Position numbers and translations under genes: made by a program. Below the pieces are notes generated by a model. That model was not told the DNA's origin and made no database searches. It saw only the letters and a program-made list of their open reading frames with translations. Shown here one piece after another: positions 20,834-61,090 of a stretch of DNA of 64,000 nt (the first letter of the stretch is position 1; each line of letters opens with the position of its first letter). The DNA is taken from the IMG/VR virus record IMGVR_UViG_3300017963_000188, positions 248,001 to 312,000 of that record; one strand, 5' to 3'.

Positions 20834-20835
20834 AT

Positions 20836-23800: not shown

Positions 23801-24264
23801 CTTCCCTGCATGCTGGTACAAATAAAGCTTATATTCTTATCACAGCTCTGAATGCATCAACAACAGATGGTGGTGGAGCAACTTCACGGCATAGAGGTGT
23901 TTTCCAAGATGATCAGCCAATGGAGTTGGTGACTACTTTAGCTAATGTGACAACTTCTCCCGATCAATCCTTTATAATTGGTAAGGATGGGGCTTCAATC
24001 ACAGGGTATTCAGACGATGCCACTCTTATCAGTGAAGGGTATACTGATGCAGATGAGATTGAGGAAGAAAGAAAGAACCGAACAGGTAATAGAGTGGTTG
24101 TTTCTTTGACCTCCATACCTGAAGATGACTTACCAACAGACCATACATACACTTGCTCATATGTTGTGAGTGGTGACTCTGGAGCAAGAGATTTGACAGC
24201 CAATAAGCTGGAATCTATTACGGTAGGTAACTTCAATATTATCTACAGTGAGGAATCATTATAA
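20836..24264 (+). CDS. Baseplate J-like (gp6-like) wedge protein with N-terminal Ig/FN3-like domains
   Basis: 1142 aa. J-like motifs SLIPGSSTRDIHLDP, ANIRALDSGSDGN, GSDIESNSSLAER, GGYLATANKTPGVQEALI. N-terminal LSLLPGENRIDIRAIDVGGNTS (Ig-like) and APTG...VVGYNFY...YYVITAV (FN3-like). Confidence 0.75.
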   Translation: MAISAPEIYLPDGSETSTYIVFSSNVREHFFEGFVDPNTIDVQVQIRGGGFVSDPTLVYLDLPNFTIPNPASYPDGLSLLPGENRIDIRAIDVGGNTSSVSSILVTYVTDKELSLQVTAPTGITVFRHKDKVTLATTQNPESEVVGYNFYASRESGGTVTGYFKLNDELVTDSYLETEDVDTHDEEISFTHENNFLRITVQEEDEDGVLVREISDSVVDMADAIPDQILSLDLTGKKSAQHFYFDHDRLAEEADGTINNDQFLDIPDDQPLYYVITAVGYDSRYREYVESKYSSELVGLPLIIDTTIKDMTPRTSQDIILSEIEQIQKHDPSVSLIPGSSTRDIHLDPPATEIERVSFIADFIHRSQSFLTLMALDDADGDGISDDVSVSPYKRALKSALLLDRDEDVQIIIDDAFDKKAGDYYVTRQGAIRSIGQAVFYLTTKPTRDLVVERGAIIATTPDEELGIPAFSYEVTSQVTMAIDNVDSYYNASRRRWEIVANIRALDSGSDGNRPANQINKVVSGASGFSVINLEPTQWGSDIESNSSLAERSMLALVSVDSGTTGGYLATANKTPGVQEALIIEADNDLMMRDWDDVRDKHIGGKVDIWIKGLNEQEVTDTFAFLFDIKENQAFDIIDAVNLVFRSTDSNLSEDNPISEMLDDPSKGWGFRNITKGTDFDLAGVTIQDYRTIQLDNGISQPTFDVDDVIVGDYRFQSTNTFTPTRQPVRRIVSVVGEVSGTLDATNGYELYKLDDPLLYGESTKANDYVKVIPYGGLPSGAVISVNDESHILVGTRHEPLDSIGVDITSIRVFNVARTIEYDGPESSSPDYLISPGSSTEPTTIVRVSSGTIANGQEVSVDYQHDENFEVRYVVNDLIRQVQENISVKKHTTADALVKQAIENSINIENTVILEYGVDRPQTDSKIRTRVAQEINSRPIGGGIRQSDVIHVEEAVSGVDYVIVPFSQMVWADGSQILRNPLLSNYVELSSLHAGTNKAYILITALNASTTDGGGATSRHRGVFQDDQPMELVTTLANVTTSPDQSFIIGKDGASITGYSDDATLISEGYTDADEIEEERKNRTGNRVVVSLTSIPEDDLPTDHTYTCSYVVSGDSGARDLTANKLESITVGNFNIIYSEESL

Positions 24265-32878: not shown

Positions 32879-35455
32879 ATGGATAAGAATTTTGATGGTT
32901 CTGTTTCGGGTTATCTAGATCCTGAAGAAAGAGCCTGGGAAACAATAGTTTACCAAAGCTCAAAGCCAATCTTGGATGTGGAGCAAAACTTACTTCAAGA
33001 TGCAAATTTTGAAGCTGCTCTTCGTAGGGTATCAGTTCCCAGTGGTTGGTTAAAGGGTGATTTCCTTGGTGGGAATATTGATTTTGAATACAGTAGCTCT
33101 ACAGCTAATGAATTCAAGTTGGTCAATAAACCAGTAGCTTTGGTGAATGGTTGGAAAGTAGTTGTCGAGTATACTGGCACTGATACAGCAAAAGAAAATA
33201 TACTTTCATTGTCAGCACCTCCAGCTACAGGTTGGAGAACAGACTTCGTGTTTTTAGAGGTCTGGAGGGCTTTGTTGAGTGCTAGTCCAGACACAACCAA
33301 TAAATCTGCTGGTGGTCGTGTCTATAGACATGGTAATGTAGGTATTGATCCAGCTCATGACGCTACTTTGAACTTTACAGATGATATTTTGCAGACTCCT
33401 CCTGGAGCTGAAACTTCTAAGAGAGTTCAGATTCAATATCGAATCAGAGTTGTAGATGGGATCAATATTAGTAGTTTCCCAATGGGTATGAACGATCCAA
33501 ATGTTGAGGCTCAGGGCACACAAGGATCTCCTGTAGGCACCTATACTTTTACTAACATGGGAGCTACTGCTGGTGATTATGGTCTATGGAGAGCCGGTGC
33601 TGGTGATACAGCGTCTCAGACAGCTCTTGGGACTGTGGATGGGTATAGTTATGCTATCCCCATTGCTGCTGTGTTTAGACGGAATACAACTGCTTTCTCA
33701 CAGTCTACTAATCATAATGGTGGTGTCCTGATAAGTGCTGGTACAAGTGACCGTCCAGATGATTTGTTTTCTGATGAGATTTCAAATGGTGATGTCCTTG
33801 ATATGAGACAGGGTACATCTCTTGTGGGTTGGGACCTTGATGAAATCTTGGAAACAAGCTTTTCAGCTTTGCTTGATAATACTTTATCTCAGGTAGAACA
33901 GAACACTAATAGTGTTCCTGGTTACACCTATGGGATGGTAGGGACTACTGTTCTACATGCTGATGAGATTGGTCCTGCTGGTACAGGTGGTTTGGGAGGT
34001 ATGAATATAGGGGAGCAGGATGCTGTCAGAAGGCGTTTCTCTGATAGAGCTATAGTAGAGCATCCCATAGTCATAAAAACCCCTACAGGAGCAACCTGGG
34101 TGAGTGACGAGGTTGTTACAATCAATCTTGGTAACTTCAATCCATATCCATTTGATGAGGGTTCAGGGTTTGACCTTGCATCAATGAGCCCTGCAAATAC
34201 GGTCATTACCGATATTCGATCTGCCTATTTTGATCATCCAAATACAACTACTGGTAAGGTCAAGGCATTTTTCAGTGAGATAAAGGGTATTGGTTCAAAT
34301 ATTGTCACATTGACTCTTGCGGATGGGGTGTGGACAGGTAATAGTCCTGATCTATGGCTCGAAGTTGAAATATCCTACCCACCTGGGAATGGTTTGACTG
34401 CAACTCCATCCAATGATTTTGGAGATACTTGGAATTCTGGTGCAGGTGGACCATTTACTTTGGAAGATGACCCCGCTGGTAGTCGTCCCGCTGACTTCAA
34501 TGACTTTGTAAATCTTGAAGTGGTGAAAAATAACCGTGAAGTTCAGGTTTTGTATGAGACAACAGATAAGACACTAGATGTATATGCTAAGGATGTGAAC
34601 ACTATAGTCCTTCCAGATCGTGTTGGTTCTGTGACAAGTGTAACAGAAGATCCATTGGGCACACCTGTTGGTCATTCATTTACTTTTACAGCAAATGATC
34701 CAGATAGGGAGATTTCAACATCTGTTGATCCACTTTCAGATCCAGATGCTTTAGTCAGAGTGGTCTATAAAGCTCTTAGACCTATTCCAAATACAGTAGG
34801 GTACTATCAAACAGTTTTTTATCAATCCAGAGCATTACAGCCTGTGAAAGATAGTATGCTGCCGAATAGTTTATTGTATCGTACCTTGTATGTGAGCCCA
34901 TATATATACGCTTTGACTGGTGGGACGGGATCATTTGGAGCTACTTATCCATATGAAGTTCCTCATGTCCACATCCCTGTATATATCAATGGAGCAGCTC
35001 CATATGTATTCAATGGGGAACATGAATTAGACTCTCCTCTTGACACCTTTACTGATGACTTTGATGCTGCTTCGGGATTTTTAAGAGTTTCTCAGAATAT
35101 ACCTCTTGTTCCGATGGCTTCAGCAGAATTACAACGGACTGCTGTGACTGATGTTGATCCTGAACAACGGGCTTTTTACCCAGAAGTACCAACATCAGAA
35201 TATCGACCCGCAGCATTTGGTAAGAACCTTTCTTTCCCACAGCGGCATAAAGTGTTCTTTCCAATTATAGCAGAACTTTTAGATGACTATGATTTCGGTA
35301 ACAAAGGCACATTGGTAATGATTGTCTTTATCCGATGGGCTGAAAATGACAATGAGAACAATGTCAGATTCGTAGATACTCCTGCTGATGATACTAGTTG
35401 TGCTGCTGTTTACCGACTCAAGGGGAATCTGTTACTGAATAGACGGAGTGTCTAA
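32879..35455 (+). CDS. Tail fibre/baseplate appendage protein, family A paralog 1 (DUF4815/DUF6519-like N-terminus)
   Basis: 858 aa. IVYQSSKPILDVEQN, DFVFLEVWRA, ETSKRVQIQYRIRV and GLWRAG...DGYSYAIPIAAVFRRN are shared with ORF 55380-59384. Confidence 0.6.
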   Translation: MDKNFDGSVSGYLDPEERAWETIVYQSSKPILDVEQNLLQDANFEAALRRVSVPSGWLKGDFLGGNIDFEYSSSTANEFKLVNKPVALVNGWKVVVEYTGTDTAKENILSLSAPPATGWRTDFVFLEVWRALLSASPDTTNKSAGGRVYRHGNVGIDPAHDATLNFTDDILQTPPGAETSKRVQIQYRIRVVDGINISSFPMGMNDPNVEAQGTQGSPVGTYTFTNMGATAGDYGLWRAGAGDTASQTALGTVDGYSYAIPIAAVFRRNTTAFSQSTNHNGGVLISAGTSDRPDDLFSDEISNGDVLDMRQGTSLVGWDLDEILETSFSALLDNTLSQVEQNTNSVPGYTYGMVGTTVLHADEIGPAGTGGLGGMNIGEQDAVRRRFSDRAIVEHPIVIKTPTGATWVSDEVVTINLGNFNPYPFDEGSGFDLASMSPANTVITDIRSAYFDHPNTTTGKVKAFFSEIKGIGSNIVTLTLADGVWTGNSPDLWLEVEISYPPGNGLTATPSNDFGDTWNSGAGGPFTLEDDPAGSRPADFNDFVNLEVVKNNREVQVLYETTDKTLDVYAKDVNTIVLPDRVGSVTSVTEDPLGTPVGHSFTFTANDPDREISTSVDPLSDPDALVRVVYKALRPIPNTVGYYQTVFYQSRALQPVKDSMLPNSLLYRTLYVSPYIYALTGGTGSFGATYPYEVPHVHIPVYINGAAPYVFNGEHELDSPLDTFTDDFDAASGFLRVSQNIPLVPMASAELQRTAVTDVDPEQRAFYPEVPTSEYRPAAFGKNLSFPQRHKVFFPIIAELLDDYDFGNKGTLVMIVFIRWAENDNENNVRFVDTPADDTSCAAVYRLKGNLLLNRRSV

Positions 35456-38400
35456 TGCCGACTAAAGTAGACCCAGGCACATTAGCCATTGGGAATGGTA
35501 AAGCAGCACAGGATTCTGTGTCTGTATCTTCCCTTGACTTTGCTCATGTAGTGGATTTCCAGGCTGCTCTATCAGGGCATCTCAATGATCCAATAGGTGC
35601 TCATCCAGCCACAGCTATTTCAACTCAGGATACCTATGGTAAATTCGATTGGACCCATGTCGAAGGGTCTTTGAATGAATTATCAGATCTCATGCCAGAT
35701 CTGATCAATACTTTGGGACAAGAGCAAGAGGGAGTCCCAAATAGTGGTGTGCCTTATTGGGGTACATTGGAAGATACTTACGATAGAATTGGAACCACTC
35801 AATCAGGTGGTTTTACTTGTACTACAGCAAATCATGCTCATGCTTCATGGAGTGGTGGGAATCAGGGGGGTACTCCTGGTAATTGGTTAGTAGAGACTCA
35901 TTGTTTACTTCAAAGTTCTATCACTACCTTTGATCTTTCTGGTATTTTGTACCCTGCTGACAGAGGGTATTTAGTATTGCTATATGCAAAGAATGGTGTC
36001 TTTGATAATACTGTGAATACAATTGAAGTTGGGGAACTTGATCTAGAAGCTAATTTCAGTGAGTCTTATAGACGTGTTCCCAATTATCAACAACCTAATT
36101 ATGTGGGTGTAGATACACATGATTCTGGGCCTGATATTTTCACACTAACATATCGACTCCCAGCTCTTAAGGAGTACAGTGCAGGAACACCTTATGAGCC
36201 ATATGATTTCAATTATCTGCAATTTCAGTTGGCTTATTTCAGTGTATCTATTGATCTCACATTATCACCATTCAATATTGGGGTTGATGTAGATTTTGGT
36301 TCTTTGAAACTGTTTCATTTCAAGACCTACAGTAATGTTGCTACAGCAGACTATAGTGCTTCAAATCTGTATGGGTCTCATGGTAAGTATGATATCTATA
36401 GTGAAGTCGATCCTGGACTGCCTGTTATTGGGACTCCTGGGACTGATTATATAGTTGAACCTACTTTTCCAGTTGGTACTGAAACACCTCCTGGTGGTAG
36501 TTATAACTGCGATTTGGCATCTCCAAATGATTTCACAAGTGCTTCAGCAGTCTTTGCAGGAGATGCTACTGATAGAGGGAAGATACTTACAGTCACAGGA
36601 TCAGTGAATGGTAACAATGGGGACTACCAAATATTAGTCGAAGATACGACTACTCATGTCAAGGTATATCCTGATTTTCCGGGGTCTCTTCCAGAAACCA
36701 CATTGAATTTTAGTATTTCTGCTCCAAATATTTTCAGATTGTCTGGTATATATCACTATGGTTCTGATAATGGATTTTGGTTGAAGTCAAGTATTGCAGG
36801 AGCAGTTTCTGGACTATGGAATCTCTCATATCTTACTGGGGTAGAATCAGATAGTAAGGTTTCTTCTGGATATCTTAGTGATAAATCTCCTTTGAAATAT
36901 GACCTTACAGATTTTGGTGCTGGGACTAGAGAAATCCCATATCATTTGTTAGATAATAATGATGCTATCAATCCTACTGATGGGTGGGATTTGAGTAAGG
37001 GAAATGGTCCAGGGCAGAGTGATGATGCAGAATACATAGGGGTTCTCATCAGCGGATCATCAGGTGGTGGTGTGAGTGACGATGCAAAAGTAAAAAATAC
37101 AATACGCACACCTTTTGCTTTGACAGAACTCGATGCAATCACTCAAACTGGTAATAAAATTCTGACAAATGCTTATGAACAGATTATAACTGGTAGATCA
37201 CAGATCGAAGATTTCACTACAGAGTTATTCAGGTATCATTTTGATGTGGCTCAAGATGAAAACACAGATTTGTTTGAACATGAGAGATACCCTTTAGTTC
37301 CTTATACTAGAGCTACTCCCAATATTGGTAATGATGGGGTGGTTTCTTCTACCAACACACTTACTTCTGCTACTGCAAATTTCACCAGTGGTGATACTGG
37401 GCGCACAATATTGATTTCTAGTGTGAAACTTTATTGGTCTGATAGTACAGCAAACAAAATACAAAGGTCCAACATTGATGGTTCGAGTGTTGAGGATGTT
37501 GTCACTGGTATTGGAGATGCTGCTGGTTTAGCACTCGATATTAATGGTGGGAAAATATATTGGGCCAATGCAACGGATCAGAAAGTACAACGAGCTAATT
37601 TTGATGGTTCAAGCATTGAAGATTTGGTGACTGGTCTTGGCACTAAGGTGTTTGCTGTTGCTTTAGATTTAGCTGTTGGGAAAATGTACTGGGCAGATTC
37701 GGATGCTGATAAAATACAACGATCTAATTTAGATGGGTCTGATGTTGAAGATGTTGTTTTAACGGGGGTAGGTAATCTTCAAAGCCTCGCTTTAAATCAC
37801 AATCTCCAAAAAGTATACTGGTCTGATCAAGGGACTTCAAAAATACAACGAGCCAATTTTGATGGTTCTGATGTTGAAGATGTTATCACAGGTGCTTCAG
37901 GTCCTAATAATATTGCTTTTGATTATACTGAAGGGAAGATGTACTGGACTGAGACAGCAGGTAACTCTATACGGAAAGCGAATTTTGATGGTTCAAGTGC
38001 AGTAAATGTCCTTACAGGATTGTCATGGCCAAGAGGTATGGCAATAAATGTTGAAGAAAGGAAGATTTATTGGTTTGACGGGAGCACCAACAATTTAAGG
38101 CAAACAGATTTCGATGGTAGCTACCTTTTGACTTTGAATTCAGGGATTTCGAATATGCCTCATATAGCATATTATGATAATCCTGTGTACGATGGTAGTT
38201 ACAAAGCTACATATGTTAGTTCTACTCAAATTACAGTGGAACCTGATTGGCCTACTCATATAGAAACTTCTGTGTCTTGGTACTTCCCAACAGTCTGGGA
38301 TTCTGATCTTGCTTTAGGATCACATATCCAGAACGAGCTTCAAGTTTTGGATGGTAAACTTGTTTACCCACAGACTAATTTCACTGCTGGGTATTACCCT

Positions 38401-39597
38401 AGTAATGGTCAGCAAAATTACGCTACGTTGTTTGCTGCTGATGTTGCTAATACAATTCGATGGTATACTCGACTTATTGACACACAATCTCCAGCAAATA
38501 GTGGTAAAATTCGTATCAAAGGTATTTCTGATTCTGCTTTTGCTGCTGGTGTTTACACAGGGGATTTGGTAGCAGACCATTCAGGTGGGGCTGTGGTTTT
38601 GATGAAAGTTCCTGGTGTGACAGGGTGGCTTGATTTGGGTCGTTATGATGGAGATCCAAATTCTGATAAGACTCAAGATTACTATGGTTGTTTAACATTT
38701 GCTTTTTACACTCAGGATATACAAACAGGGGTAGGTACCACATATGGTATAGCTCTTGATACTGATTCTGAAAAGATATATTGGGCTGATAGTAGTAGTG
38801 GGGATATTAAACGATCTGATTTTGATGGTAGTAACATTGAAACCATTCATACAGGACTTGGATCTCTTCGAGGTATTGCCATTGATGCAAATGGTGGAAA
38901 ACTCTATTGGGTTGATTTCACTGGTTTCATCTATCGTTCAAATATAGATGGATCAAATATTGAGACAATAATCTCAGGGTTGTCTTTTCCCAGATGTCTT
39001 GCTCTAGATATAGATGCAGGTAAGTTGTATTATGGGGGTAATGGTGGGATAAAACGATCCAATCTGGATGGCTCTGATATTGAAGATATTATCATTATAG
39101 GGACTGTAGGTGGGTTGTCTCTAGATACAAATGCCGAGAAAGTGTATTGGTTTGATATTCTTGGCACAAAGAAAATCCTACGAGCCAATCTTGATGGTAG
39201 TTCGGTGGAGGTTCTTGTAGATTATGGGATTGACCCTACTGGTATTGCTGTTGATGCTGCTGGAGGGAAAATATATTGGGTTGATACTACAGGCACAGAT
39301 TATGTTAAACGTGCTAACCTAGATGGTTCTGATATTGAAGATGTTATAGGTCTAGGGAGTCAGAACCCTACTGCTATAGTTTTAGATGTTTCTGATAATA
39401 TTATGTATTGGGCAGAGGATTCCAGTAGTAAGATCCGAAGAGCCAACATGGATGGTTCAGGTATTTATAGTTATAACACTGAATTCTACACTCAAGATAA
39501 TGGTGATGGGGGATGCCCTATTGCTATTAGGATAGGTTTCATCAAAGATGGTACGGGTGAAAACCATGAGGTTGAATCCATTGAATGGTTACCATAA
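35455..39597 (+). CDS. Virion appendage protein, family B paralog 1, with two six-bladed LDLR class B (YWTD) beta-propellers
   Basis: 1380 aa. HLNDPIGAHPATAIS fibre-type motif. Twelve KxYWxD...IxRxNxDGS repeats (about 37423-38175 and 38718-39462). KVPGVTGWLDLG C-terminal scaffold. Confidence 0.8.
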   Translation: MPTKVDPGTLAIGNGKAAQDSVSVSSLDFAHVVDFQAALSGHLNDPIGAHPATAISTQDTYGKFDWTHVEGSLNELSDLMPDLINTLGQEQEGVPNSGVPYWGTLEDTYDRIGTTQSGGFTCTTANHAHASWSGGNQGGTPGNWLVETHCLLQSSITTFDLSGILYPADRGYLVLLYAKNGVFDNTVNTIEVGELDLEANFSESYRRVPNYQQPNYVGVDTHDSGPDIFTLTYRLPALKEYSAGTPYEPYDFNYLQFQLAYFSVSIDLTLSPFNIGVDVDFGSLKLFHFKTYSNVATADYSASNLYGSHGKYDIYSEVDPGLPVIGTPGTDYIVEPTFPVGTETPPGGSYNCDLASPNDFTSASAVFAGDATDRGKILTVTGSVNGNNGDYQILVEDTTTHVKVYPDFPGSLPETTLNFSISAPNIFRLSGIYHYGSDNGFWLKSSIAGAVSGLWNLSYLTGVESDSKVSSGYLSDKSPLKYDLTDFGAGTREIPYHLLDNNDAINPTDGWDLSKGNGPGQSDDAEYIGVLISGSSGGGVSDDAKVKNTIRTPFALTELDAITQTGNKILTNAYEQIITGRSQIEDFTTELFRYHFDVAQDENTDLFEHERYPLVPYTRATPNIGNDGVVSSTNTLTSATANFTSGDTGRTILISSVKLYWSDSTANKIQRSNIDGSSVEDVVTGIGDAAGLALDINGGKIYWANATDQKVQRANFDGSSIEDLVTGLGTKVFAVALDLAVGKMYWADSDADKIQRSNLDGSDVEDVVLTGVGNLQSLALNHNLQKVYWSDQGTSKIQRANFDGSDVEDVITGASGPNNIAFDYTEGKMYWTETAGNSIRKANFDGSSAVNVLTGLSWPRGMAINVEERKIYWFDGSTNNLRQTDFDGSYLLTLNSGISNMPHIAYYDNPVYDGSYKATYVSSTQITVEPDWPTHIETSVSWYFPTVWDSDLALGSHIQNELQVLDGKLVYPQTNFTAGYYPSNGQQNYATLFAADVANTIRWYTRLIDTQSPANSGKIRIKGISDSAFAAGVYTGDLVADHSGGAVVLMKVPGVTGWLDLGRYDGDPNSDKTQDYYGCLTFAFYTQDIQTGVGTTYGIALDTDSEKIYWADSSSGDIKRSDFDGSNIETIHTGLGSLRGIAIDANGGKLYWVDFTGFIYRSNIDGSNIETIISGLSFPRCLALDIDAGKLYYGGNGGIKRSNLDGSDIEDIIIIGTVGGLSLDTNAEKVYWFDILGTKKILRANLDGSSVEVLVDYGIDPTGIAVDAAGGKIYWVDTTGTDYVKRANLDGSDIEDVIGLGSQNPTAIVLDVSDNIMYWAEDSSSKIRRANMDGSGIYSYNTEFYTQDNGDGGCPIAIRIGFIKDGTGENHEVESIEWLP

Positions 39598-39609
39598 TGA
39601 GGTATTTCG

Positions 39610-42600
39610 ATGCCAACTAAAGTAGATCCAGGTACTCTTGCCATAGGTAGTGGTAAGGCTGCTCAAGATAGTATTTCAGTATCTTCTCTTGATTTTGCTC
39701 ATTTGATTGATTTTCAAGCAGCTTTGTCAGCTCACGTCAATGACCCTGATGGGGCTCATCCAGCTTCTGCTATTTCGGTGCAGGATGTTTACGCAAAATA
39801 TGATGGTGTGAATGCTGAAATCGTGTTTGATGAAATTTCTGATCTTGTTCCAGATTACCCTAATGCTATTGGTGAAAGTCGATCAGTTCCAAATTCGGGA
39901 GTGCCTGATTGGGGTGTTTTGGATACATACTCTAAGACAGGTGGTTTCACTTGTGATACAGCAAATCATGGTCATACATCGTGGGGTGGTGGGAATCAAG
40001 GAGGCACCCCAGGGGATTGGATAGCAGAGACTCATTGTTTGATTCCTGATACAGTCACAGGCTGTGTAATTACAGGTACACTGTACCCTGCTGATAGAGG
40101 ATACCTTGTGCTATTGTATGCTACAAAGGGTGTGTTTGATAATAGTGGGGATACAATAGAAGTTGGAAAGCTGAATCTAGCTTCTAATTTTGATGAGCTT
40201 CGTAGACGAAACCCTGCTGTGGGATACCAACAACTTGATTACACAGCTTCTGAAAATCATTGGGACCCTGGCACAGATATATTTTCACTAACGTATCGTC
40301 TTCCAATGCTAAAGGAATATGATGCTGGAGTACCTTATACTACATATGATTTCAATTATCTTCAGTTCCAATTAGCTCGATACACAGCCACATTGGATTT
40401 GACGGCTACTCCATTTGATATTGGTACTGATGTAGATTTTGGATCTCTTAAATTGTTCCATTTCAAGTCATATACAAATGTGGCTGGAGCTAATTACAGT
40501 GCTTCAAATCTGTATGGGTCACATGGGAAATTGGATATTTATTCTGACACTTCACCAGCAGCTCCAACTTTAAATGAAGCTGGTGGTGAGGTATTAATCA
40601 ATGCTGCATATCCTTTGGGTACAGAAACAACGTCAGTAGTAGCAAATGCTGACCTCACAACTCCGAACAATCTGGCTGCTGGTACAGCAATCTTTGCTGG
40701 AGATTCTACAGACCGTGGCAAGATACTTACCATTACAGGTTCTAGTCAGGGGAACAATGGTACTTACCAAGTTTTGAATGAGGTAGACGCCTCGAATGTC
40801 AAGGTATACCCTAATTTCCCTGGCACATTGCCTGATACAGTGACACCACAAGTGCAGATAGAAGGTGCTAATGTAGTACGTCTTTCAGGAATAGCACATT
40901 ATGGTCCTGATAATGGTTTTTATGTAGACCAGACTTTTATCACCACTCCAGATTTTTGGAATAATTCATACCTAACCAGTGATGTGGCTGATCCAAAAGT
41001 GTCTTCGGAGTATTTAAGTGATAAGTCACCTCTGAGTTATGACTTTAGTGATTTCGGAGTTGTTGTAAAAGACATACCTTACCATTTGGATCTTTCTTCT
41101 GTTAGTTTGAGTAAAGGAGATGGACCAGCAATAGATACTTCTGCTAGTCATCGAGCTACATTCATAAGTCAAGAATCTTTAGTAGTAAGAAAGGGTGGTA
41201 GTTCCTATTTGTCTAGAGTATCACATATAGTACGTTCTCCTTTCACCACAATGCAAGATTACAGCTCAAATCCAGTTGGTATCCTTTTGGTAGACGTTTA
41301 TGGGCAAGAAATATCTAGTAAAATGAAAGAAGAATTTTACACAGAGCAGTATAGATATGATCTTGGTACAGATCTCTTAGAGTTCATCAAGTATCCAATA
41401 ATTCCTTATGATCGTAGTGCTCCAAATTTTGGGGATGATGGTGTTGTTTCAGGGTCAAATACCTTTACTTCAGCTACAGCTAGTTTTACTTCAGCAGATA
41501 CTGGTAGAATAATAAATATTGCTAAAAGGCCAAAATTATATTGGACTGACCGTCAGGATGACCAAATTCAAAGATCTAATCTTGATGGAGCATTTGTCGA
41601 GACCGTGTATTCATGGGGACAGAATCCAAATGGTATAGCTTTAGATACTGTTAATGGTAAAATTTACTGGGCTGATTTTAATTACCAAGAAGTAAAGAGA
41701 ATGAATTTTGATGGTAGTGGTTTTGAGACAGTATGGTCGGGACAGCAAGTATATAAAATAGCACTTGATGTAGATGCTGGTAAAATTTATTACTCAGACA
41801 GAGGAGACCATTGGATAAAACGAGCAAATATGTCAGATGGTTCTAGTAAAGAAAGTCTTATTAATTATGATGATGTCGATTGTGTGTTTCTTGATATCGA
41901 TGCAGGTAAAATATACTATACTACAGGAAGCCCAGGATTAAATACCATCTCTAGAGCTAATATGTCTGATGGTTCTAGTATTGAAGTTTTGTATACTGTA
42001 ACCAGTCCTGAATGGATACCTGATTTTGCTTTTGACTTAATACATGGATATATTTATTTTACAGTTATTGGTCCTTCAGGTAGAATTATGCGGTGTGATT
42101 TGGATGGTTCAAATGATGTCACAATAACACCATCAGTAATGGCTTACAATATTGAAATTGATGTTGATGGTGGTAAGTTATATTGGAGTGATGTGACTTC
42201 CAATGTCATTAAATGGAGTGACTTGGATGGTTCTAATATTGAAAGTATTATTTCAGTGACATCAGGGTCCGAATCTGTGAGGGATATGGCTCTGATGTTG
42301 GAATCTTCTTTTGAGAGTTATACTGCTACTTATGTCAATGGTACTGAAATAAGTGTGAGTCCCGATTGGCCTTCAGTAGATGGTGTTATGCGGGAATGGA
42401 GATTTCCAGTGCAATTTGATTCAGATGCAGATCTTTCAACATTCACACAAAAAGAACTTCAAGTTGCATCTGGGCAATTAGTAGTGCCAGAAAATGATTA
42501 CACCGCAGGTTGGGCTTTACCAAGTGCTGGTCAGTTTGATTATAGTGGTTTAGCAGGTGGGGACCCTGCTGATACAATTCGATGGTATACAAGACTTTTT

Positions 42601-43773
42601 GACACTGGAGGACCTACTAATGTAGGTAGATTCCGAATTAAAGGTATACATCAAAAAGATTTTGGAGTGACTGGGCCTTTCACTGGTGATTTACCTACAG
42701 ATCATGAAGGTGACACTATATCTGGTGAGGGTGGATCAGTAGGGGGTGGTGTAGTTGTTTTGGTGAAAATACCTGGTGTGACAGGTTGGTTGGATCTAGG
42801 TCGTAGTAATGGTGATCCTAACATTGATAAGACAAAAGATTACTATGGATGTCTGGTTCAGTCTAACCAAATTGAGAATCTGGTAGATGGTCTTACAGAT
42901 TCAAATGCCATAGCTCTTGATATAAATGCTAGTAAGATGTATTGGACTGACACAGTAACTTCAAAAATACAACGATCTGACCTTGATGGATCGAATGTTG
43001 AAGATATTTACACAGCATCAGATGCTTGGGGTATTGCTCTGGATACTAATGCTGATAAAATGTACTTCACTAGTCCAGGCGCAAATAAGATTAGAAAAGC
43101 AGACCTAGATGGTAGTAATGTAGAAGATTTAGTAGATACTGGGTCAGGATTGCCTACAAGTATTGCTTTGGATATCAATGCTGGTAAAATGTATTGGATC
43201 AGTTTTGGACCTCCAAATCATATCTATCGAGCAAATTTAGATGGCTCAATGGTAGAAACTCTTGTATCAAATATTGGTGCTAATCCTTATGGTATAGCAT
43301 TAGATGTGGATGCTGGATATATGTATTGGTCTGATACAGCAGAGAGTTATATTAGACGAGCTGATTTGGATGGTTCTTTTGTAGATATCGTGGTGGAAGA
43401 TGCTTTGAGTCCAAATGGAATAGCTCTTGATCTAGAAGAAGGGAAGATTTATTGGCAAGGTCTGAGTCAAATCAATAGATGTGACCTTGATGGTTCTAAT
43501 AGGGAAGATTCTATAACACCCAGAGGATTGACTAAAGGGAAAGGTTTGGCTTTGGATACGGATTCTCGTAAGATATACTGGACCAATTATAATCACCATA
43601 AGATACAAAAGACAAGTATGGATGGTATGAGCATATATACTTACACTACAGATTATTACACTCAAGATAACGGTTTGGGAGAGTATCCCATTGCTATTAG
43701 GATAGGTTTAATAAAAGATGGTTATGGTTACTGGAATGACGTGGTAACTATCGAATGGCTACCGTATACATAA
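39610..43773 (+). CDS. Virion appendage protein, family B paralog 2, with two YWTD beta-propellers
   Basis: 1387 aa. Collinear full-length paralog of the previous gene (MPTKVDPGTLAIG start, EWLP end). Twelve YWTD-type repeats (about 41530-42300 and 42871-43626). Confidence 0.8.
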   Translation: MPTKVDPGTLAIGSGKAAQDSISVSSLDFAHLIDFQAALSAHVNDPDGAHPASAISVQDVYAKYDGVNAEIVFDEISDLVPDYPNAIGESRSVPNSGVPDWGVLDTYSKTGGFTCDTANHGHTSWGGGNQGGTPGDWIAETHCLIPDTVTGCVITGTLYPADRGYLVLLYATKGVFDNSGDTIEVGKLNLASNFDELRRRNPAVGYQQLDYTASENHWDPGTDIFSLTYRLPMLKEYDAGVPYTTYDFNYLQFQLARYTATLDLTATPFDIGTDVDFGSLKLFHFKSYTNVAGANYSASNLYGSHGKLDIYSDTSPAAPTLNEAGGEVLINAAYPLGTETTSVVANADLTTPNNLAAGTAIFAGDSTDRGKILTITGSSQGNNGTYQVLNEVDASNVKVYPNFPGTLPDTVTPQVQIEGANVVRLSGIAHYGPDNGFYVDQTFITTPDFWNNSYLTSDVADPKVSSEYLSDKSPLSYDFSDFGVVVKDIPYHLDLSSVSLSKGDGPAIDTSASHRATFISQESLVVRKGGSSYLSRVSHIVRSPFTTMQDYSSNPVGILLVDVYGQEISSKMKEEFYTEQYRYDLGTDLLEFIKYPIIPYDRSAPNFGDDGVVSGSNTFTSATASFTSADTGRIINIAKRPKLYWTDRQDDQIQRSNLDGAFVETVYSWGQNPNGIALDTVNGKIYWADFNYQEVKRMNFDGSGFETVWSGQQVYKIALDVDAGKIYYSDRGDHWIKRANMSDGSSKESLINYDDVDCVFLDIDAGKIYYTTGSPGLNTISRANMSDGSSIEVLYTVTSPEWIPDFAFDLIHGYIYFTVIGPSGRIMRCDLDGSNDVTITPSVMAYNIEIDVDGGKLYWSDVTSNVIKWSDLDGSNIESIISVTSGSESVRDMALMLESSFESYTATYVNGTEISVSPDWPSVDGVMREWRFPVQFDSDADLSTFTQKELQVASGQLVVPENDYTAGWALPSAGQFDYSGLAGGDPADTIRWYTRLFDTGGPTNVGRFRIKGIHQKDFGVTGPFTGDLPTDHEGDTISGEGGSVGGGVVVLVKIPGVTGWLDLGRSNGDPNIDKTKDYYGCLVQSNQIENLVDGLTDSNAIALDINASKMYWTDTVTSKIQRSDLDGSNVEDIYTASDAWGIALDTNADKMYFTSPGANKIRKADLDGSNVEDLVDTGSGLPTSIALDINAGKMYWISFGPPNHIYRANLDGSMVETLVSNIGANPYGIALDVDAGYMYWSDTAESYIRRADLDGSFVDIVVEDALSPNGIALDLEEGKIYWQGLSQINRCDLDGSNREDSITPRGLTKGKGLALDTDSRKIYWTNYNHHKIQKTSMDGMSIYTYTTDYYTQDNGLGEYPIAIRIGLIKDGYGYWNDVVTIEWLPYT

Positions 43774-43785
43774 GGATGTTTAGGC

Positions 43786-46700
43786 ATGGCAACATTCAAC
43801 GACCATTTCAAAGATCTCTTAAATCTTGTTGCCAAGAGAGTTTTGGGTCGGGAGCACACTTCTGATATTCCTATTGACTTGGAAGGAGCCTATCGTCCCT
43901 ACAATCAAATAACTCCATTTGATAAGATTGAAGATACAGGTCTTAGTGAATTTAAGTATACTTCTGGTATCAGGAAGTCAAACGCTACTCAGCCAGAAGT
44001 TAATCTTTTCAGTTTTTCTGATAATATTTCTGATAATGCTCAAGGACGTATTGCTACTATTTACGGTATTAAAGAAGTAAGCTATTCAGATACTGATGGT
44101 AGTGACGTTGGGTATGTAGCTGATAACTACAGATTCATTCACAGGACGTTTGATTTCCCTGACCAGGGGGTCAGTGCTGGGGATGTTATGTTTGTGCCTC
44201 TGACAGGTAGATTCTACGTCTCAGATGCAGTTATTACAGGAGATCCACCTAATACTGGACTTCAATTTCCTGTAGATACTTTTTCAGAGCCTACATTCAC
44301 ATTTGGTTCAGATATTGATGTTCTGATTCTTCAGAGAAATGCTGTTCAACTTTTCACTGTATCTGGACCCAATGTAGAAGTAGGTCGAGAACAAACCTTT
44401 TTTATGGTTACTCCTGATGTGGTTCAAAACCCAAGTCCTTATCTTGCTGACTTAAATTTGCTATCTCCAAAACGTCTACGTCCCTTGATGCCTCATAGGA
44501 AGAGTACCAAGATTGATTCAATCTTCACAAAAGGAGTGTTGGGTCTCAAATCAGATTGGGATTTTATGCTGGTTCTTTATCCAGATGATGGTGCTGGAAA
44601 TCCAGATTACACAAAACCAATCATAGGACCGAGACCTATAATCGATAGCTCTATCTCTGATGAACAGGAAATGATTATTGACCATATGAATGGTTCTGTT
44701 CATTTTACAGTGCCTCCACGTCCAGGAGATGAAATCAATCCAAATGCTGTGACCGGAGCACCCCTGAAACTGTGGGCTATCTTTGCTACCATAACAATGG
44801 GCACTAGTGTATCTCAGACAAATTCAAATAGTCTTGTTCGAGGTGTCAGTGATTTCAACCCAGTATTGGTTGATGATAAAACAAGCACCCCTTCATATTT
44901 CAGATATGACCAGAATAGAAAGATTTGGTCGTTATTTTCAGGAGAAAAATATCTAGAAACAGATCCAGCAAATCAACCAGCTCAAGGGTTTGAGGTTGGT
45001 GAGCTAGGAGTAGAGAAAACCAACAGAGCAGGTTTCAGATTAAATCCAGAGAATGAAACTTGGGAAGTGTGTTCTATCCCTTCTGATTCTGATTTCATAC
45101 CGTTACGACTCACTTCAGGAGAAGTTGGGGGTACTCATCCTGGTATCAGTGTGGACGCTCCAGGATATACAGGTGGTTTCTTTTATAACAGTGGTGAAGA
45201 TAGATGGGGTTTGGATAAAGACCTATACATGGTTACTGCTGTTGAGGAATTAGGTTCTGATTCTTTACCTAATAGTTCGAATGTGAAAGTGGCTGTGTCT
45301 GGTAATTTTGCATATATTATCAGGAATGTGTCTGGTGATGGGTTCCTTTATGTATATGATATATCAGATCCTAATGCTATTGTTATGAGAGATTCTGAAG
45401 TTGTTGCAGGTCGTGAATTTCTAGACATAGATATATCTGGAACCAATGTTTTTGTCCTTATAACAAATGAAATTCAAGTCTACAATGTTTCAAATCCAGA
45501 TAGTATCTCATTGACAGATGGGTACCCTGCTGGTTCAGATGTGTATTTCCAAAGATTAAAAGTAATTGGTGATTATGTTTATGTTGTTGTACTATCATAC
45601 TTTACAGAATTATTCAATTGGGGATCTAGTCTATGGGTTCTTGATTTTAATGTGACAACGGCAGATGAACTCACTTATAGAGATGATGCTAATGTTCTTG
45701 GTCCACATGATCCACCTGGTCCTGGTTATGTGTCAGTGACAACAACTGATGTTTCTATAATAGCTACTATGATGTATAAAGAAGTTTTGTATACAATTGA
45801 TGTCACAGATCCAGATTCTGTATCTGTTCTTGATAGCGTTGTTGTTACAGATGGAACAGAAGTTGATGTTGAAAGAGACATAGTTGCAGTGTTATGTCCT
45901 GATGAATCTATAGATACTTTGAGGTTGTTTGATATTTCCAATCCGTCTTCCATACAAGTTAGAGATACTACAACATCTGGTTTGGATTCACCTGTTGATG
46001 TGATTGTTTCTCGTGGATATGTTTGGGTAGCTAATAGTGGTGATATGACACTTCTCAAATTTAGTGCTGTGAATCCTCTTAATATTGTGTTAGATAATTC
46101 ATATATCCAAACAGGTAATGGATTACTAGATCTAGATCTTAATAATAGTAAATTAGCTGTGTTAACAAGTAGTCCAACTACTGATATTCTGAAAATTTAT
46201 AATGAAATAAATACACAAGTACAGTTCCATCAAATAATATCTTCTTCAATTGATACTGATTATCTTGATTCTGAAACGGCAGTCATTGAAGATTTGACTG
46301 CAACAATAGTCAGGACAAATACTATTGATGGTGGCAGTTCTTTATTGTCTGTAGATGCTAATACTGAAATAACAGGTTCACTAATAACTAATGGTGTGAC
46401 CAATTCTGGTATTGTGCGGAGTTCTGATTCTAATATACCAATCCAAGGAAGTGCTACTGGGTCATATTCATCTAGTCAGATAGTAGGTTCTCAGCTCGCT
46501 CCTTGGGGTGTTGATATCGATTACACTACTGGTAAAGTCTATTGGGCCAGTTATGGTAGATCTTCTGGGCAAGATATCATTCAAAGAGCTAATCTAGATG
46601 GGACGAATGTTGAAACAATAATTGGTGGCTTGCAGCAACCATATGCTTTAGAGTTAGATGTTCCTGGAGGAAAAGTCTATTGGTCTGATATGTTTACCAA

Positions 46701-47415
46701 TGGTATTCATAGAGCTGATCTTGATGGGTCAAATACTGAACAAATAATAACAGGACAAGATGAACCTCGTGATATAGCTCTTGATTTAGTTGGGGGAAAG
46801 GTGTATTGGACAGAATCTGCTGGGAATGTAGTGAGAAGAGCTAATCTTAATGGTTCTTCTGTTGAAACTCTTGTCTCAGGTCTTTCGCAACCACAAGGGA
46901 TAGCGGTAGATCCAGCAAATGGTAAGATGTATTATTCTGATGAAACTCTTGCAAAGATAGTGCAGGCCAATTTGGATGGTTCTTCACCTGTAGATATTTT
47001 AACAACTATAGATGCTCGTAATCTTGTTGTTAGGCATAATAAATTATTTATTTCGGAGTATGTTTCTGATCGTATTAGAATGTCTAATTTAGATGGTTCT
47101 AATCTTGTATATATTAAATCAGGTGTGAATCTGACTCCATGTGGTATTGGTGTGAGAGACCATTTATTGGTTTGGACATCAACATATAATGATAATGTAA
47201 GTAAAATACCATTAGTTGTGTCAGGTATTTTAGGTGAGGCAGAAGATGGTTATGGTGGATACTTTTTTGGGACAAGTACCAGAGCACCTATCCATGTTGA
47301 AGGTATGAGTGCTTTACCATCAAGTGCAATGCAAGGTGATATTGCAGTTAGAGATAGTGATAACACCGTACATATATACCTGAATAGTGCTTGGAGACAG
47401 TTCACTGTCACATAG
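43786..47415 (+). CDS. Tail fibre-like protein, family C paralog 1, with LVIVD-like and YWTD propellers
   Basis: 1209 aa. N-terminal ~480 aa shared with the next two ORFs. LVIVD-like repeats (VAVSGNFAYI, LYVYDISDP, LRLFDISNP) at about 45230-46205. Six YWTD-type repeats at about 46480-47215. Confidence 0.75.
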   Translation: MATFNDHFKDLLNLVAKRVLGREHTSDIPIDLEGAYRPYNQITPFDKIEDTGLSEFKYTSGIRKSNATQPEVNLFSFSDNISDNAQGRIATIYGIKEVSYSDTDGSDVGYVADNYRFIHRTFDFPDQGVSAGDVMFVPLTGRFYVSDAVITGDPPNTGLQFPVDTFSEPTFTFGSDIDVLILQRNAVQLFTVSGPNVEVGREQTFFMVTPDVVQNPSPYLADLNLLSPKRLRPLMPHRKSTKIDSIFTKGVLGLKSDWDFMLVLYPDDGAGNPDYTKPIIGPRPIIDSSISDEQEMIIDHMNGSVHFTVPPRPGDEINPNAVTGAPLKLWAIFATITMGTSVSQTNSNSLVRGVSDFNPVLVDDKTSTPSYFRYDQNRKIWSLFSGEKYLETDPANQPAQGFEVGELGVEKTNRAGFRLNPENETWEVCSIPSDSDFIPLRLTSGEVGGTHPGISVDAPGYTGGFFYNSGEDRWGLDKDLYMVTAVEELGSDSLPNSSNVKVAVSGNFAYIIRNVSGDGFLYVYDISDPNAIVMRDSEVVAGREFLDIDISGTNVFVLITNEIQVYNVSNPDSISLTDGYPAGSDVYFQRLKVIGDYVYVVVLSYFTELFNWGSSLWVLDFNVTTADELTYRDDANVLGPHDPPGPGYVSVTTTDVSIIATMMYKEVLYTIDVTDPDSVSVLDSVVVTDGTEVDVERDIVAVLCPDESIDTLRLFDISNPSSIQVRDTTTSGLDSPVDVIVSRGYVWVANSGDMTLLKFSAVNPLNIVLDNSYIQTGNGLLDLDLNNSKLAVLTSSPTTDILKIYNEINTQVQFHQIISSSIDTDYLDSETAVIEDLTATIVRTNTIDGGSSLLSVDANTEITGSLITNGVTNSGIVRSSDSNIPIQGSATGSYSSSQIVGSQLAPWGVDIDYTTGKVYWASYGRSSGQDIIQRANLDGTNVETIIGGLQQPYALELDVPGGKVYWSDMFTNGIHRADLDGSNTEQIITGQDEPRDIALDLVGGKVYWTESAGNVVRRANLNGSSVETLVSGLSQPQGIAVDPANGKMYYSDETLAKIVQANLDGSSPVDILTTIDARNLVVRHNKLFISEYVSDRIRMSNLDGSNLVYIKSGVNLTPCGIGVRDHLLVWTSTYNDNVSKIPLVVSGILGEAEDGYGGYFFGTSTRAPIHVEGMSALPSSAMQGDIAVRDSDNTVHIYLNSAWRQFTVT

Positions 47416-47425
47416 GAATAGATTT

Positions 47426-52294: not shown

Positions 52295-52303
52295 AGGATT
52301 GTC

Positions 52304-61076: not shown

Positions 61077-61090
61077 AGACAGGATTGGAT

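What the first reader, a model, noticed from the sequence alone, without database searches (positions are those of the whole stretch)
35455..47415. Five complete LDL-receptor-type (YWTD) beta-propellers on phage virion proteins
Seen: 30 YWTD-like repeats (consensus GIALDxxxGKxYWxD...IxRANLDGSxxE) in five groups of exactly six. Two groups are in ORF 35455, two in ORF 39610 and one in ORF 43786. Established: six LDLR class B repeats form one propeller, the ligand-binding module of metazoan LDLR/LRP/nidogen. It is also known from some bacterial surface proteins. Inference: this phage displays a multivalent array of protein-binding propellers on its tail appendages, either as receptor-binding heads or for adhesion to surfaces or eukaryotic matrix. 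Such a load in a tail module looks atypical to me and is the best candidate for an undescribed adsorption system here.
Basis: partly seen in the sequence, partly recalled or inferred. Interest (0 to 1): 0.82.

Follow-up and report, generated by a model that had tools for sequence, protein, structure and literature searches.

The report
YWTD propellers inserted in jumbo-phage tail proteins
Three neighbouring tail-module genes of an uncultured marine jumbo phage carry five real LDL-receptor-type (YWTD) six-bladed propellers, each inserted into a loop of a conserved phage protein and most similar to bacterial surface proteins; they probably help the phage stick to its host, a use of this domain not seen in any deposited phage genome or paper searched.

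Summary
ORFs A (35455-39597), B (39610-43773) and C (43786-47415) hold 6+6, 6+6 and 5+1 (degenerate) YWTD repeats. Pfam Ldl_recept_b is the top family in all three. LRP2/4/6, LDLR and nidogen are the best solved relatives by sequence and by fold.

The genes lie in a same-strand block downstream of the baseplate genes (gp25-like, Baseplate_J) of a 358-kb IMG/VR jumbo myophage, and that gene order recurs in a distant 485-kb phage. C shares its N-terminal ~500 aa with a beta-helix protein (D) and with a third paralogue (E).

- The propellers are nested insertions in loops of conserved scaffolds, not terminal heads. Close homologues of each scaffold lack them.
- Their nearest relatives are bacterial T9SS/dockerin multi-propeller surface proteins (46-52% identity), not animal receptors.
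- Copy number in this module runs 0, 0, 1, 5 across related phages, and the propellers diverge faster than their scaffolds.

At least 18 other IMG/VR contigs carry YWTD-like propellers in unrelated large proteins. None of 50,697 GenBank phage records does, and no paper searched describes this. Binding and virion presence are untested.

The parts
35455..39597 (+). ORF A, 1380 aa: conserved phage scaffold carrying two inserted YWTD propellers
   Evidence: scaffold HMM 514.6 bits
37408..38172 (+). A propeller 1 (aa 652-906), six YWTD repeats, inserted in the turn of a ~75-aa small beta domain
38734..39474 (+). A propeller 2 (aa 1094-1340), six YWTD repeats, inserted between 'DYYGC' and 'YSYNTEFYTQDNG' of the C-terminal beta-sandwich domain
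39610..43773 (+). ORF B, 1387 aa: paralogue of A (48% identity overall) with the same two insertion sites
41518..42300 (+). B propeller 1 (aa 637-897), six repeats; the most diverged of the five
42895..43647 (+). B propeller 2 (aa 1096-1346), six repeats
43786..47415 (+). ORF C, 1209 aa: a different scaffold. N-terminal ~500-570 aa shared with D and E, then LVIVD repeats, one inserted YWTD propeller and a conserved 50-aa C-terminal tail
45283..46185 (+). LVIVD-repeat region of C (aa ~500-800), a second propeller-type repeat
   Evidence: PF08309, 23.2 bits, cut-off 20.2
46495..47235 (+). C YWTD propeller (aa 904-1150): five clear repeats plus one degenerate sixth. Absent from the 48%-identical homologue P0249, which aligns to C 1-776 and 1158-1208
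47426..52294 (+). ORF D: paralogue of C (42% identity over the N-terminal ~570 aa) with a right-handed beta-helix. Its likely true start is ATG 47426
52304..54400 (+). ORF E: third paralogue sharing the N-terminal domain of C and D
32879..35455 (+). 858-aa protein always found immediately upstream of the A-like gene (window, L045, L046, L047, LR745208). Its N-terminus is paralogous to 55380-59384
19760..24264 (+). Baseplate genes that anchor the module: sheath-initiator (gp25-like) 19760-20833 and Baseplate_J / wedge subunit 20836-24264
36487..36711 (+). Uninterrupted copy of the ~75-aa small domain (A aa 345-419). Its second copy hosts propeller 1. The domain also occurs in 10516-16863 and 25075-30051

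Best explanation
A, B and C are peripheral baseplate or tail-appendage proteins of an uncultured marine jumbo myophage, and they serve host adhesion.

Each protein is built on a conserved phage scaffold. In A and B this is a ~720-840-aa multi-beta-sandwich protein. In C it is an N-terminal domain shared with the beta-helix protein D and with E. The N-terminal part of each scaffold presumably docks to the baseplate.

Complete six-bladed YWTD propellers have been inserted into surface loops or hairpins of the distal domains of these scaffolds. This is possible because a propeller's two ends lie side by side. The propellers belong to a lineage common in bacterial cell-surface proteins (T9SS or dockerin-anchored, with several propellers each). 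They were most likely captured from bacteria, then multiplied within the phage and diverged.

Mechanism (inferred): the propellers act as non-enzymatic binding modules whose top faces recognise a component of the host envelope, either glycan or protein. Five different propellers on three proteins, each probably present in many copies around the six-fold baseplate, would give avid and possibly multi-specific reversible adsorption. The neighbouring beta-helix paralogue D would supply a depolymerase-type activity.

Shown here: the domain identity, the insertion architecture, the module position, the bacterial affinity, and the copy-number change among relatives. Inferred: virion location, binding function and ligand.
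For: Domain identity:
- Pfam Ldl_recept_b scores 141/104/66 bits.
- PDB phmmer gives LRP2, LRP4, LRP6, LDLR and nidogen as best matches, with no SGL or lactonase enzyme at E<=1e-3.
- The AF2 model has two 24-strand units. Its top 38 Foldseek hits in the PDB are all LRP6, LRP4 or LRP2, at E 1e-35 to 1e-28.

Insertion architecture:
- In alignment A1, P0004 (839 aa) lacks both propellers and P0003 (1109 aa) has only the C-terminal one. In P0003 the small domain reads through uninterrupted ('ILISGTSNGNDGTYRV') where A and B carry 255 aa.
- P0249 aligns to C 1-776 and 1158-1208 and skips the propeller.
- The scaffold family has 127 representatives, typically ~720 aa. No Pfam family matched the seven further family members scanned with Pfam; only the window's close kin (P0001-P0003) carry YWTD.
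- In the P0004 model, insertion site 2 falls at or next to a predicted beta-hairpin (E781-791/E794-800), placed by eye from the A1 alignment and not computed.

Tail-module context:
- gp25-like, Baseplate_J, hub/lysozyme-like and tail-protein hits lie upstream on the same strand.
- The same order (gp25-like, J..., 858-aa homologue, A-like gene) occurs in the 485-kb phage LR745208.
- C, D and E share an N-terminal domain and differ in their distal parts, one of which is a beta-helix.
- The scaffold fold matches full-length uncharacterised proteins of the phages CcrColossus, Atu_ph07 and PTm1 at E 1e-15 to 1e-7.

Bacterial affinity: 46-52% identity to multi-propeller proteins with dockerin, FlgD_ig, CARDB and T9SS domains, found in Anaerolineae, Planctomycetes, Caldilineaceae, Poribacteria, Lewinellaceae, Latescibacterota and Gemmatimonadaceae.

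Fast divergence:
- A against B is 66% identical in the N-terminus, 52% in the middle part and 66% in the C-terminus, but only 37% and 41% in the propellers. The same pattern holds against P0003.
- The window propellers are long branches, 1.0-2.0 against a median of 0.33.

Turnover: YWTD count in this module is 0 (LR745208, L047), 1 (L045/L046) and 5 (window).

Precedent: the RBP of phage phi11 uses a five-bladed propeller platform proposed to bind GlcNAc of teichoic acid (PMC4901313).
Against: - There is no direct evidence that A, B or C are in the virion. PHROGs gave no family for them.
- PDB fold matches of the scaffold to a solved baseplate (phi812) are weak, at E 5e-4 and TM ~0.1.
- The BFVD structural relatives are unannotated, and one of them (CcrColossus) is, to my recollection, a phiCbK-like phage with a non-contractile tail.
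- No ligand can be inferred from sequence.
- The oligomeric state and copy number per virion are unknown.
- SGL and Vgb_lyase models also score above or at their cut-offs, so an enzymatic role is not formally excluded.
- The propeller tree is unresolved. Neither the donor nor the number of acquisitions is shown.
Confidence: 0.6

Rival explanations
1. The propellers are enzymes of the SGL / SMP-30 / Vgb-lyase / arylesterase type. They would act as depolymerases or modifying enzymes on a host surface polymer and not as passive binders.
For: Pfam SGL scores 54.1 and 53.1 bits (cut-off 26.3) in A and B. Vgb_lyase scores 50.2 (cut-off 50) in B. Arylesterase gives a weak hit. n-bladed propellers are a recognised phage depolymerase fold (PMC11326577).
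Against: Ldl_recept_b scores two to three times higher. The SGL matches cover only part of the profile (positions 122-241 of 246). PDB phmmer returns no lactonase, lyase or esterase at E<=1e-3, only LDLR-family receptors, nidogen, designed or NHL propellers, ROS1 and an S-layer protein. All top structural hits are LRP receptors. The innermost-strand motif (P-x-G-I-A-L-D) repeats near-symmetrically in all blades, without the blade-specific Glu/Asn/Asp metal ligands typical of SGL enzymes. That last point is my reading of the alignment and was not formally tested.
Confidence: 0.12
2. The propellers mediate adhesion to something other than the host cell, such as particles, biofilm matrix, mucus or a eukaryotic surface. 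This would enrich phage where hosts live, in the manner of capsid Ig-like domains.
For: The phage occurs in sediment and seawater metagenomes. Related bacterial propellers occur in surface-attached and symbiotic lineages, including Poribacteria. YWTD propellers of animals bind matrix and protein ligands (established knowledge).
Against: The genes sit in the baseplate-proximal module next to a beta-helix paralogue, which is the usual place for host-recognition proteins. The nearest relatives are bacterial, not animal. Nothing here speaks specifically for a eukaryotic ligand.
Confidence: 0.1
3. The propellers are structural protein-protein interaction hubs that cross-link neighbouring tail proteins during assembly and never touch a receptor.
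For: Propellers are common scaffolding modules. The scaffolds A/B and C lie among many large paralogous proteins that must assemble together.
Against: Close relatives assemble the same module with one or no propeller. The propellers evolve faster than the scaffolds. Both points are the opposite of what is expected for conserved assembly interfaces.
Confidence: 0.08
4. A, B and C are not virion components. They could be secreted or ejected proteins, or non-structural genes that merely lie in the late operon.
For: No PHROG or PDB sequence match assigns them to a tail part. A NUDIX hydrolase gene also lies inside this block.
Against: The genes are tightly packed on one strand with 1-nt overlap or 12-nt spacers and SD motifs. 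Their position after the baseplate wedge genes is conserved in a distant phage. C shares its N-terminal domain with a beta-helix protein. Protein-atlas neighbours are all viral, some with tail-fibre families, though only as weak leads.
Confidence: 0.06

Closest known systems
YWTD (LDLR class B, Pfam PF00058 / SMART LY) six-bladed beta-propeller of LRP6, LRP4, LRP2, LDLR and nidogen
   Same: Six ~42-aa repeats per unit. Y-W-x-D in strand 2 and I-x-R-x-x-L-DG in strand 3. A 24-strand propeller. Best sequence and fold matches in the PDB.
   Different: No flanking EGF modules and no cysteine-rich context. The propellers are nested inside phage beta-sandwich domains instead of being strung between EGF repeats. 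Only part of the sequence aligns to animal propellers (best single stretch 56 bits), against 46-52% identity to bacterial ones.
Bacterial multi-propeller surface proteins (DUF5050/Ldl_recept_b with dockerin, FlgD_ig, CARDB, DUF11 and T9SS C-terminal sorting domains), e.g. 'T9SS type A sorting domain-containing protein [Gemmatimonadaceae]'
   Same: Closest sequence relatives of every one of the five propellers, at 180-244 bits (B1 162) and 46-52% identity (B1 40-42%). Extracellular display is presumed.
   Different: The bacterial proteins carry tandem propellers plus secretion or anchoring domains. The phage proteins have none of those domains, and each propeller is inserted singly into a phage scaffold. 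The function of the bacterial proteins is itself uncharacterised, as far as I know.
Staphylococcus phage phi11 receptor-binding protein Gp45 (five-bladed propeller platform); also PRD1 P2, phiKZ gp131C and the phage endosialidases
   Same: A beta-propeller displayed on a baseplate-attached protein for host recognition (PMC4901313).
   Different: Different propeller families and blade numbers (5, 7, or the sialidase type). One propeller per chain, arranged in series with the other domains. No YWTD repeats, and no sequence relation was detected.
Multi-RBP branched adsorption systems of large myophages, with a conserved N-terminal anchor and swapped distal domains (for example the CBA120 tailspikes; recalled from memory, not tested here)
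   Same: C, D and E share an N-terminal domain and differ in their distal parts (YWTD, beta-helix, other). A/B and 32879/55380 are further paralogous pairs.
   Different: No sequence or fold link to the gp10-like anchor domains of those systems was found or tested. The distal module here is a YWTD propeller inserted in a loop.

Membership tests
YWTD / LDLR class B beta-propeller (PF00058) | Score above the Pfam gathering threshold, and the best-scoring family among propeller families | tested here: met
   141.3, 104 and 65.7 bits against a cut-off of 21. Higher than DUF5050, SGL, Vgb_lyase and NHL.
YWTD / LDLR class B beta-propeller (PF00058) | Six consecutive ~40-45-aa repeats per unit | tested here: met
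   Own HMM: 6+6, 6+6 and 5. The sixth blade of C is degenerate and was seen only in the alignment.
YWTD / LDLR class B beta-propeller (PF00058) | Six-bladed, four-stranded propeller fold closest to solved YWTD domains | tested here: met
   AF2 gives two 24-strand units with pLDDT 80-97. The top 38 Foldseek hits in the PDB are LRP6, LRP4 or LRP2. PDB phmmer E is 1e-97 to 1e-14 for LRP2, LRP4, LRP6, LDLR and nidogen.
Metazoan LDLR-family EGF-precursor homology domain | Propeller flanked by EGF-like modules | tested here: not met
   No EGF or other cysteine-rich Pfam family in A, B or C. The flanks are phage scaffold sequence.
NHL-repeat propeller (PF01436) | Score above the gathering threshold | tested here: not met
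   Seen only in C, at 16.9 bits against a cut-off of 20. Pizza and PknD NHL structures score below the LDLR-family ones.
SGL / SMP-30 / gluconolactonase-type enzymes (PF08450) | Full-length match and catalytic metal ligands | tested here: inconclusive
   Above the cut-off in A and B, but only profile positions ~122-241 of 246 are matched. No such enzyme appears among PDB hits at E<=1e-3. Catalytic residues were not formally mapped.
Phage receptor-binding / tail-appendage proteins | Encoded in the tail/baseplate module, with conserved synteny | tested here: met
   Downstream of gp25-like and Baseplate_J on the same strand. The same order is found in LR745208, L045, L046 and L047.
Phage receptor-binding / tail-appendage proteins | Conserved anchoring part with variable or exchangeable distal part | tested here: met
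   C, D and E share an N-terminus and differ in their distal domains. The A/B scaffolds are 52-66% identical against 37-41% for the propellers. Propellers are present or absent among homologues.
Phage receptor-binding / tail-appendage proteins | Physical presence in the virion and binding to a host receptor | not testable with these tools
   The phage is uncultured. No proteome or structure is available.

The most novel reading that the evidence does not exclude
YWTD propellers are a so far undescribed class of phage host-recognition module. They would have been captured from the surface proteins of the bacterial host lineage itself, so that the phage uses the host's own envelope- or polymer-binding domain to find that envelope. 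They are spread by a 'propeller-in-loop' mechanism that lets a phage raise its valency stepwise, seen here as 0, then 1, then 5 copies among related phages. The same domain recurs in unrelated giant structural proteins of other uncultured phages.
Probability: 0.3. Interest if true: 0.7.

Novelty: new variant of a known kind. Interest (0 to 1): 0.5.

Why it matters
Receptor-binding proteins decide phage host range, and for uncultured jumbo phages they are almost entirely unannotated.

This locus adds a domain family, the YWTD propeller, to the set of phage adhesion modules. It shows how such a module is installed: as a nested insertion into loops of a conserved scaffold. It also gives a natural series (0, 1 and 5 propellers in otherwise collinear modules) in which gain, duplication and fast divergence of binding domains can be studied.

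The locus also links a large, uncharacterised group of bacterial multi-propeller surface proteins to phage biology. If a ligand is found for either side, it will probably inform the other.

Practically, PF00058 or DUF5050 hits in tail modules could be used to flag candidate RBPs in metagenomic phages.

Tried and rejected
- megablast of the 12-kb region against GenBank phages found no match.
- PHROGs gave no family for A, B or C, or for the scaffold relatives.
- PDB sequence searches with the scaffold P0004, with D, with the 858-aa protein and with Baseplate_J gave no hits.
- The PDB fold search of the scaffold model gave only weak hits: phi812 baseplate chains at E 5e-4 with TM ~0.1, and CBM-like sandwiches. 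I do not rely on these.
- The protein-atlas look-ups scored below 0.9, so they are leads only.
- Phylogeny of 62 propellers (5 window, P0003, 6 viral, 50 bacterial; 6 very divergent rows left out) was star-like, with the window propellers as long branches. No donor could be named. A single clade of the five plus P0003 is not rejected (p-AU 0.86), but long-branch attraction cannot be excluded. Animal sequences could not be added, because no tool returned them as usable records.
- I tried to locate the Atu_ph07 structural homologue (BFVD A0A2L0UZW9, 712 aa) in its genome, so as to use the published virion proteome (PMC6102473). One 50-kb stretch held no 712-aa gene and no scaffold-HMM hit, and I stopped there.
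- The first genome-contig scan with the five-propeller alignment failed for lack of a conserved stretch. It was repeated with one propeller.
- P0187 looked like an A-type protein by length and Pfam content, but it is a tandem multi-propeller protein without the scaffold.
- Microdiversity could not be assessed. The two sample contigs differ at 2 of 24,140 positions, both outside the propellers, and only assembled contigs are held for the runs.

Full report
**What the window is.** All large ORFs lie on the + strand. Protein A is 100% identical on two IMG/VR viral contigs, UViG_3300017963_000188 (358 kb) and 3300017971_000194 (186 kb). The two copies differ at 2 of 24,140 bases. Public runs holding the sequence are a sediment and a seawater metagenome.

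Upstream of the finding lie several tail and baseplate genes:
- a tail-protein-like gene and a hub/lysozyme-like gene (5249-9924);
- a gp25-like sheath initiator (19760-20833);
- a Baseplate_J wedge protein (20836-24264).

The nearest deposited phage is the 485-kb uncultured phage LR745208 (Baseplate_J 34% identical over 98%). More distant hits are Tunturiibacter phage Tunturi_5 and Bacillus phage G. The window is therefore part of the tail module of a jumbo contractile-tailed phage. A SNF2 helicase closes the block at 61085.

**The observation.** ORFs A, B and C have exactly the coordinates given. Pfam puts Ldl_recept_b first in all three (141.3, 104 and 65.7 bits; cut-off 21). It is ahead of DUF5050, SGL, Vgb_lyase, Arylesterase and NHL.

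A motif scan finds 12, 12 and 5 copies of I-x-R-A-N-L-DGS. An HMM built from them finds 6+6, 6+6 and 5 repeats at 34-66 bits each, and nothing elsewhere in any frame of the 64 kb. The sixth blade of C is degenerate but alignable.

phmmer against the PDB gives LRP2, LRP4, LRP6, LDLR and nidogen as best matches. Designed or NHL propellers score lower, and there is no lactonase-type enzyme.

An AlphaFold2 model of A 590-1380 shows two units of 24 strands with pLDDT 80-97. Its 38 best Foldseek matches in the PDB are all LRP6, LRP4 or LRP2.

**Anatomy: insertions, not heads.**

*A and B.* These are paralogues, 48% identical over the full length. A word-index search and an exhaustive HMMER search with the scaffold found:
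- P0003 (1109 aa), which has only the C-terminal propeller;
- P0004 (839 aa), which has none;
- a family of 127 representatives, mostly ~720 aa. Seven further members scanned with Pfam matched no family.

In alignment A1 the first insertion splits a ~75-aa small domain at its turn. P0003 reads 'ILISGTSNGNDGTYRV', whereas A reads 'ILISS' + 255 aa + 'GSYKA'. The second insertion lies between 'DYYGC...' and '...YTYTTDFYTQDNG' of the C-terminal domain. In the model of P0004 that domain is a confident beta-sandwich (pLDDT ~90). By eye from the A1 alignment, the site falls at or next to a predicted hairpin, E781-791/E794-800.

*C.* This is a different scaffold. [quoted passage not shown] C then has LVIVD repeats, then the YWTD unit. 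Its last 51 aa match the last 51 aa of P0249. P0249 is an 876-aa homologue that aligns to C 1-776 and simply lacks the propeller.

All five propellers are thus nested in proteins whose close relatives do without them.

**Comparative series.** Contigs L045 and L046 are sister phages, 60-72% identical in the flanking genes and in the same gene order. They carry one A-like gene with one propeller and a C-like gene with none. They have no B and no D. L047 (~40% identity) has an A-like and a C/D-like gene without any YWTD.

LR745208 keeps the order gp25-like, Baseplate_J..., 858-aa homologue, A-like gene. The A-like gene scores 168 bits (E 1.7e-50) on the scaffold HMM and has no YWTD.

The count in this module is 0, 0, 1 and 5. 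With LR745208 and L047 as the more distant relatives, gain and amplification in the window's lineage is the simpler reading. Loss in the others is not excluded.

**Where the propellers come from.** Each window propeller is closer to bacterial propellers than to any of its four siblings. The figures are 46-52% identity and 180-244 bits for bacterial ones (B1 only 40-42% and 162 bits), against 35-42% and 108-177 bits for siblings.

The bacterial proteins are 0.9-2.4-kaa multi-propeller proteins with dockerin, FlgD_ig, CARDB, DUF11 and T9SS sorting domains, encoded on megabase contigs. Two are named as Gemmatimonadaceae proteins. A genome scan adds Anaerolineae, Planctomycetes, Caldilineaceae, Poribacteria, Lewinellaceae, Latescibacterota, Nitrospira and others.

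A 62-row tree is star-like, with the window propellers on long branches. A single clade of the five plus P0003 is not rejected (p-AU 0.86). One capture followed by internal duplication is compatible with this, but it is not demonstrated.

By segment, A against B is 66%, 50%, 52% and 66% identical in the scaffold parts, but 37% and 41% in the propellers. Against P0003 the propeller is again the least conserved part. Faster change in the propellers fits a surface under receptor-driven selection. It would equally fit relaxed constraint.

**How common is this?** tblastn of two of the propellers against 50,697 GenBank phage records gave nothing, with one chance-level hit at E 0.8. PHROGs has no matching family. 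Full-text searches for YWTD or PF00058 together with phage terms found no description; the hits concern the unrelated B. subtilis gene ywtD or phage display.

A pattern-limited scan of IMG/VR found 18 further contigs with YWTD-like propellers in unrelated proteins of 292-5305 aa. At least five of these proteins have a full run of six repeats. In L006 the 2674-aa carrier follows a tail sheath and a baseplate hub gene. In L008 the carrier follows a terminase and a major head gene.

The domain is therefore rare but recurrent in uncultured phage structural modules. By these searches it is absent from cultured phages and from the literature searched.

**Most likely function.** The module position, the conserved-anchor and variable-distal pattern, the beta-helix paralogue next door, the loop display and the fast divergence all point to host-adhesion proteins at the periphery of the baseplate.

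The phi11 RBP, whose five-bladed propeller platform is proposed to bind GlcNAc of teichoic acid, is the closest functional precedent. That paper lists only PRD1 P2, phiKZ gp131C and the endosialidases as other phage propellers (PMC4901313).

I estimate about 0.6 for adhesion to the host envelope by non-enzymatic binding. The rivals are:
- an enzymatic role (SGL and Vgb_lyase partial matches; propeller depolymerases exist, PMC11326577);
- adhesion to non-host surfaces;
- a purely architectural role;
- non-virion proteins.

Each is listed with its test in the rival explanations.

**What remains unknown.** Virion presence, oligomeric state, ligand, host, and the direction and number of acquisition events are all unknown.

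The scaffold fold has full-length matches to uncharacterised proteins of Caulobacter phage CcrColossus, Agrobacterium phage Atu_ph07 and Tenacibaculum phage PTm1, at E 4e-16 to 1.5e-7. Atu_ph07 has a published virion proteome of 131 proteins (PMC6102473).

**Verdict.** It needs correcting on origin (bacterial, not animal-like), on architecture (loop insertions) and on uniqueness (a rare, recurrent, undescribed feature of uncultured phages). I rate it a new variant of a known kind, namely modular phage receptor-binding proteins, with moderate interest.

Noticed in passing
window 45283-46185 (C aa ~500-800): LVIVD repeats (PF08309, 23.2 bits, cut-off 20.2). Protein C therefore carries two different propeller-type repeat families in one chain.
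   Followed up: partly
window 47387-47430: The listed GTG start of ORF D (47387) overlaps the end of C. The N-terminal alignment with C (MVDFNEHLKDLL against MATFNDHFKDLL) and an AGGA motif upstream point to ATG 47426 as the real start.
   Followed up: yes
window 43786-54400: C, D and E are paralogues sharing ~480-570 N-terminal residues (35-42% identity) with different distal parts: YWTD+LVIVD, right-handed beta-helix (Beta_helix/NosD), and unknown. 32879-35455 and 55380-59384 likewise share ~300 N-terminal residues.
   Followed up: partly
window 38704-38718 and 39484-39498: An imperfect 15-nt direct repeat (13/15 identical, both copies encoding FYTQD) flanks propeller 2 of A. It is absent from B and from P0003. 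It could be an insertion or recombination scar, or chance.
   Followed up: partly
window 36487-36711; also within 10516-16863 (aa ~1941-2006) and 25075-30051 (aa ~617-690): A ~75-aa small domain ('F-x-GD-x-x-x-R-G-x-I-L-x-I-x-G-x-x-x-GNNG-x-Y-x-V...P-x-F/W-P') recurs in four tail-module proteins. A second copy in A and B is the host of propeller 1.
   Followed up: partly
window 31612-32169: A NUDIX hydrolase gene (Pfam 37.2 bits; PHROG nudix/MutT) sits inside the otherwise structural-looking tail block.
   Followed up: no
window, 30 predicted starts: Shine-Dalgarno-like motifs (GGAG, GAGG, AGGA or AAGG at -20 to -5) precede 22 of 30 starts, against 16% of random positions. From general knowledge this argues against a Bacteroidota host, despite the 39% G+C and the T9SS-type relatives of the propellers.
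   Followed up: partly
P0039 (1204 aa) and about 60 other representatives: The N-terminal ~105 aa of A and B (MPTKVDP...HP.SAI...) forms a separate module shared by many 900-1250-aa proteins with other distal parts. One of them carries RCC1-type propeller repeats. This suggests a common adaptor with exchangeable cargo.
   Followed up: no
window 25075-30051: A 1658-aa protein following the baseplate genes has a CHB_HEX_C / Fn3_assoc domain near its C-terminus (aa ~1506-1576). In LR745208 its homologue is fused with the homologue of 24264-25064.
   Followed up: no
L005 (IMGVR_UViG_3300017963_000499, same sample set as the window): A different viral contig (46% G+C, 37 kb) from the same metagenome project encodes a 656-aa protein with ten YWTD repeats (6+4). 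The domain therefore occurs in more than one phage of that habitat.
   Followed up: no
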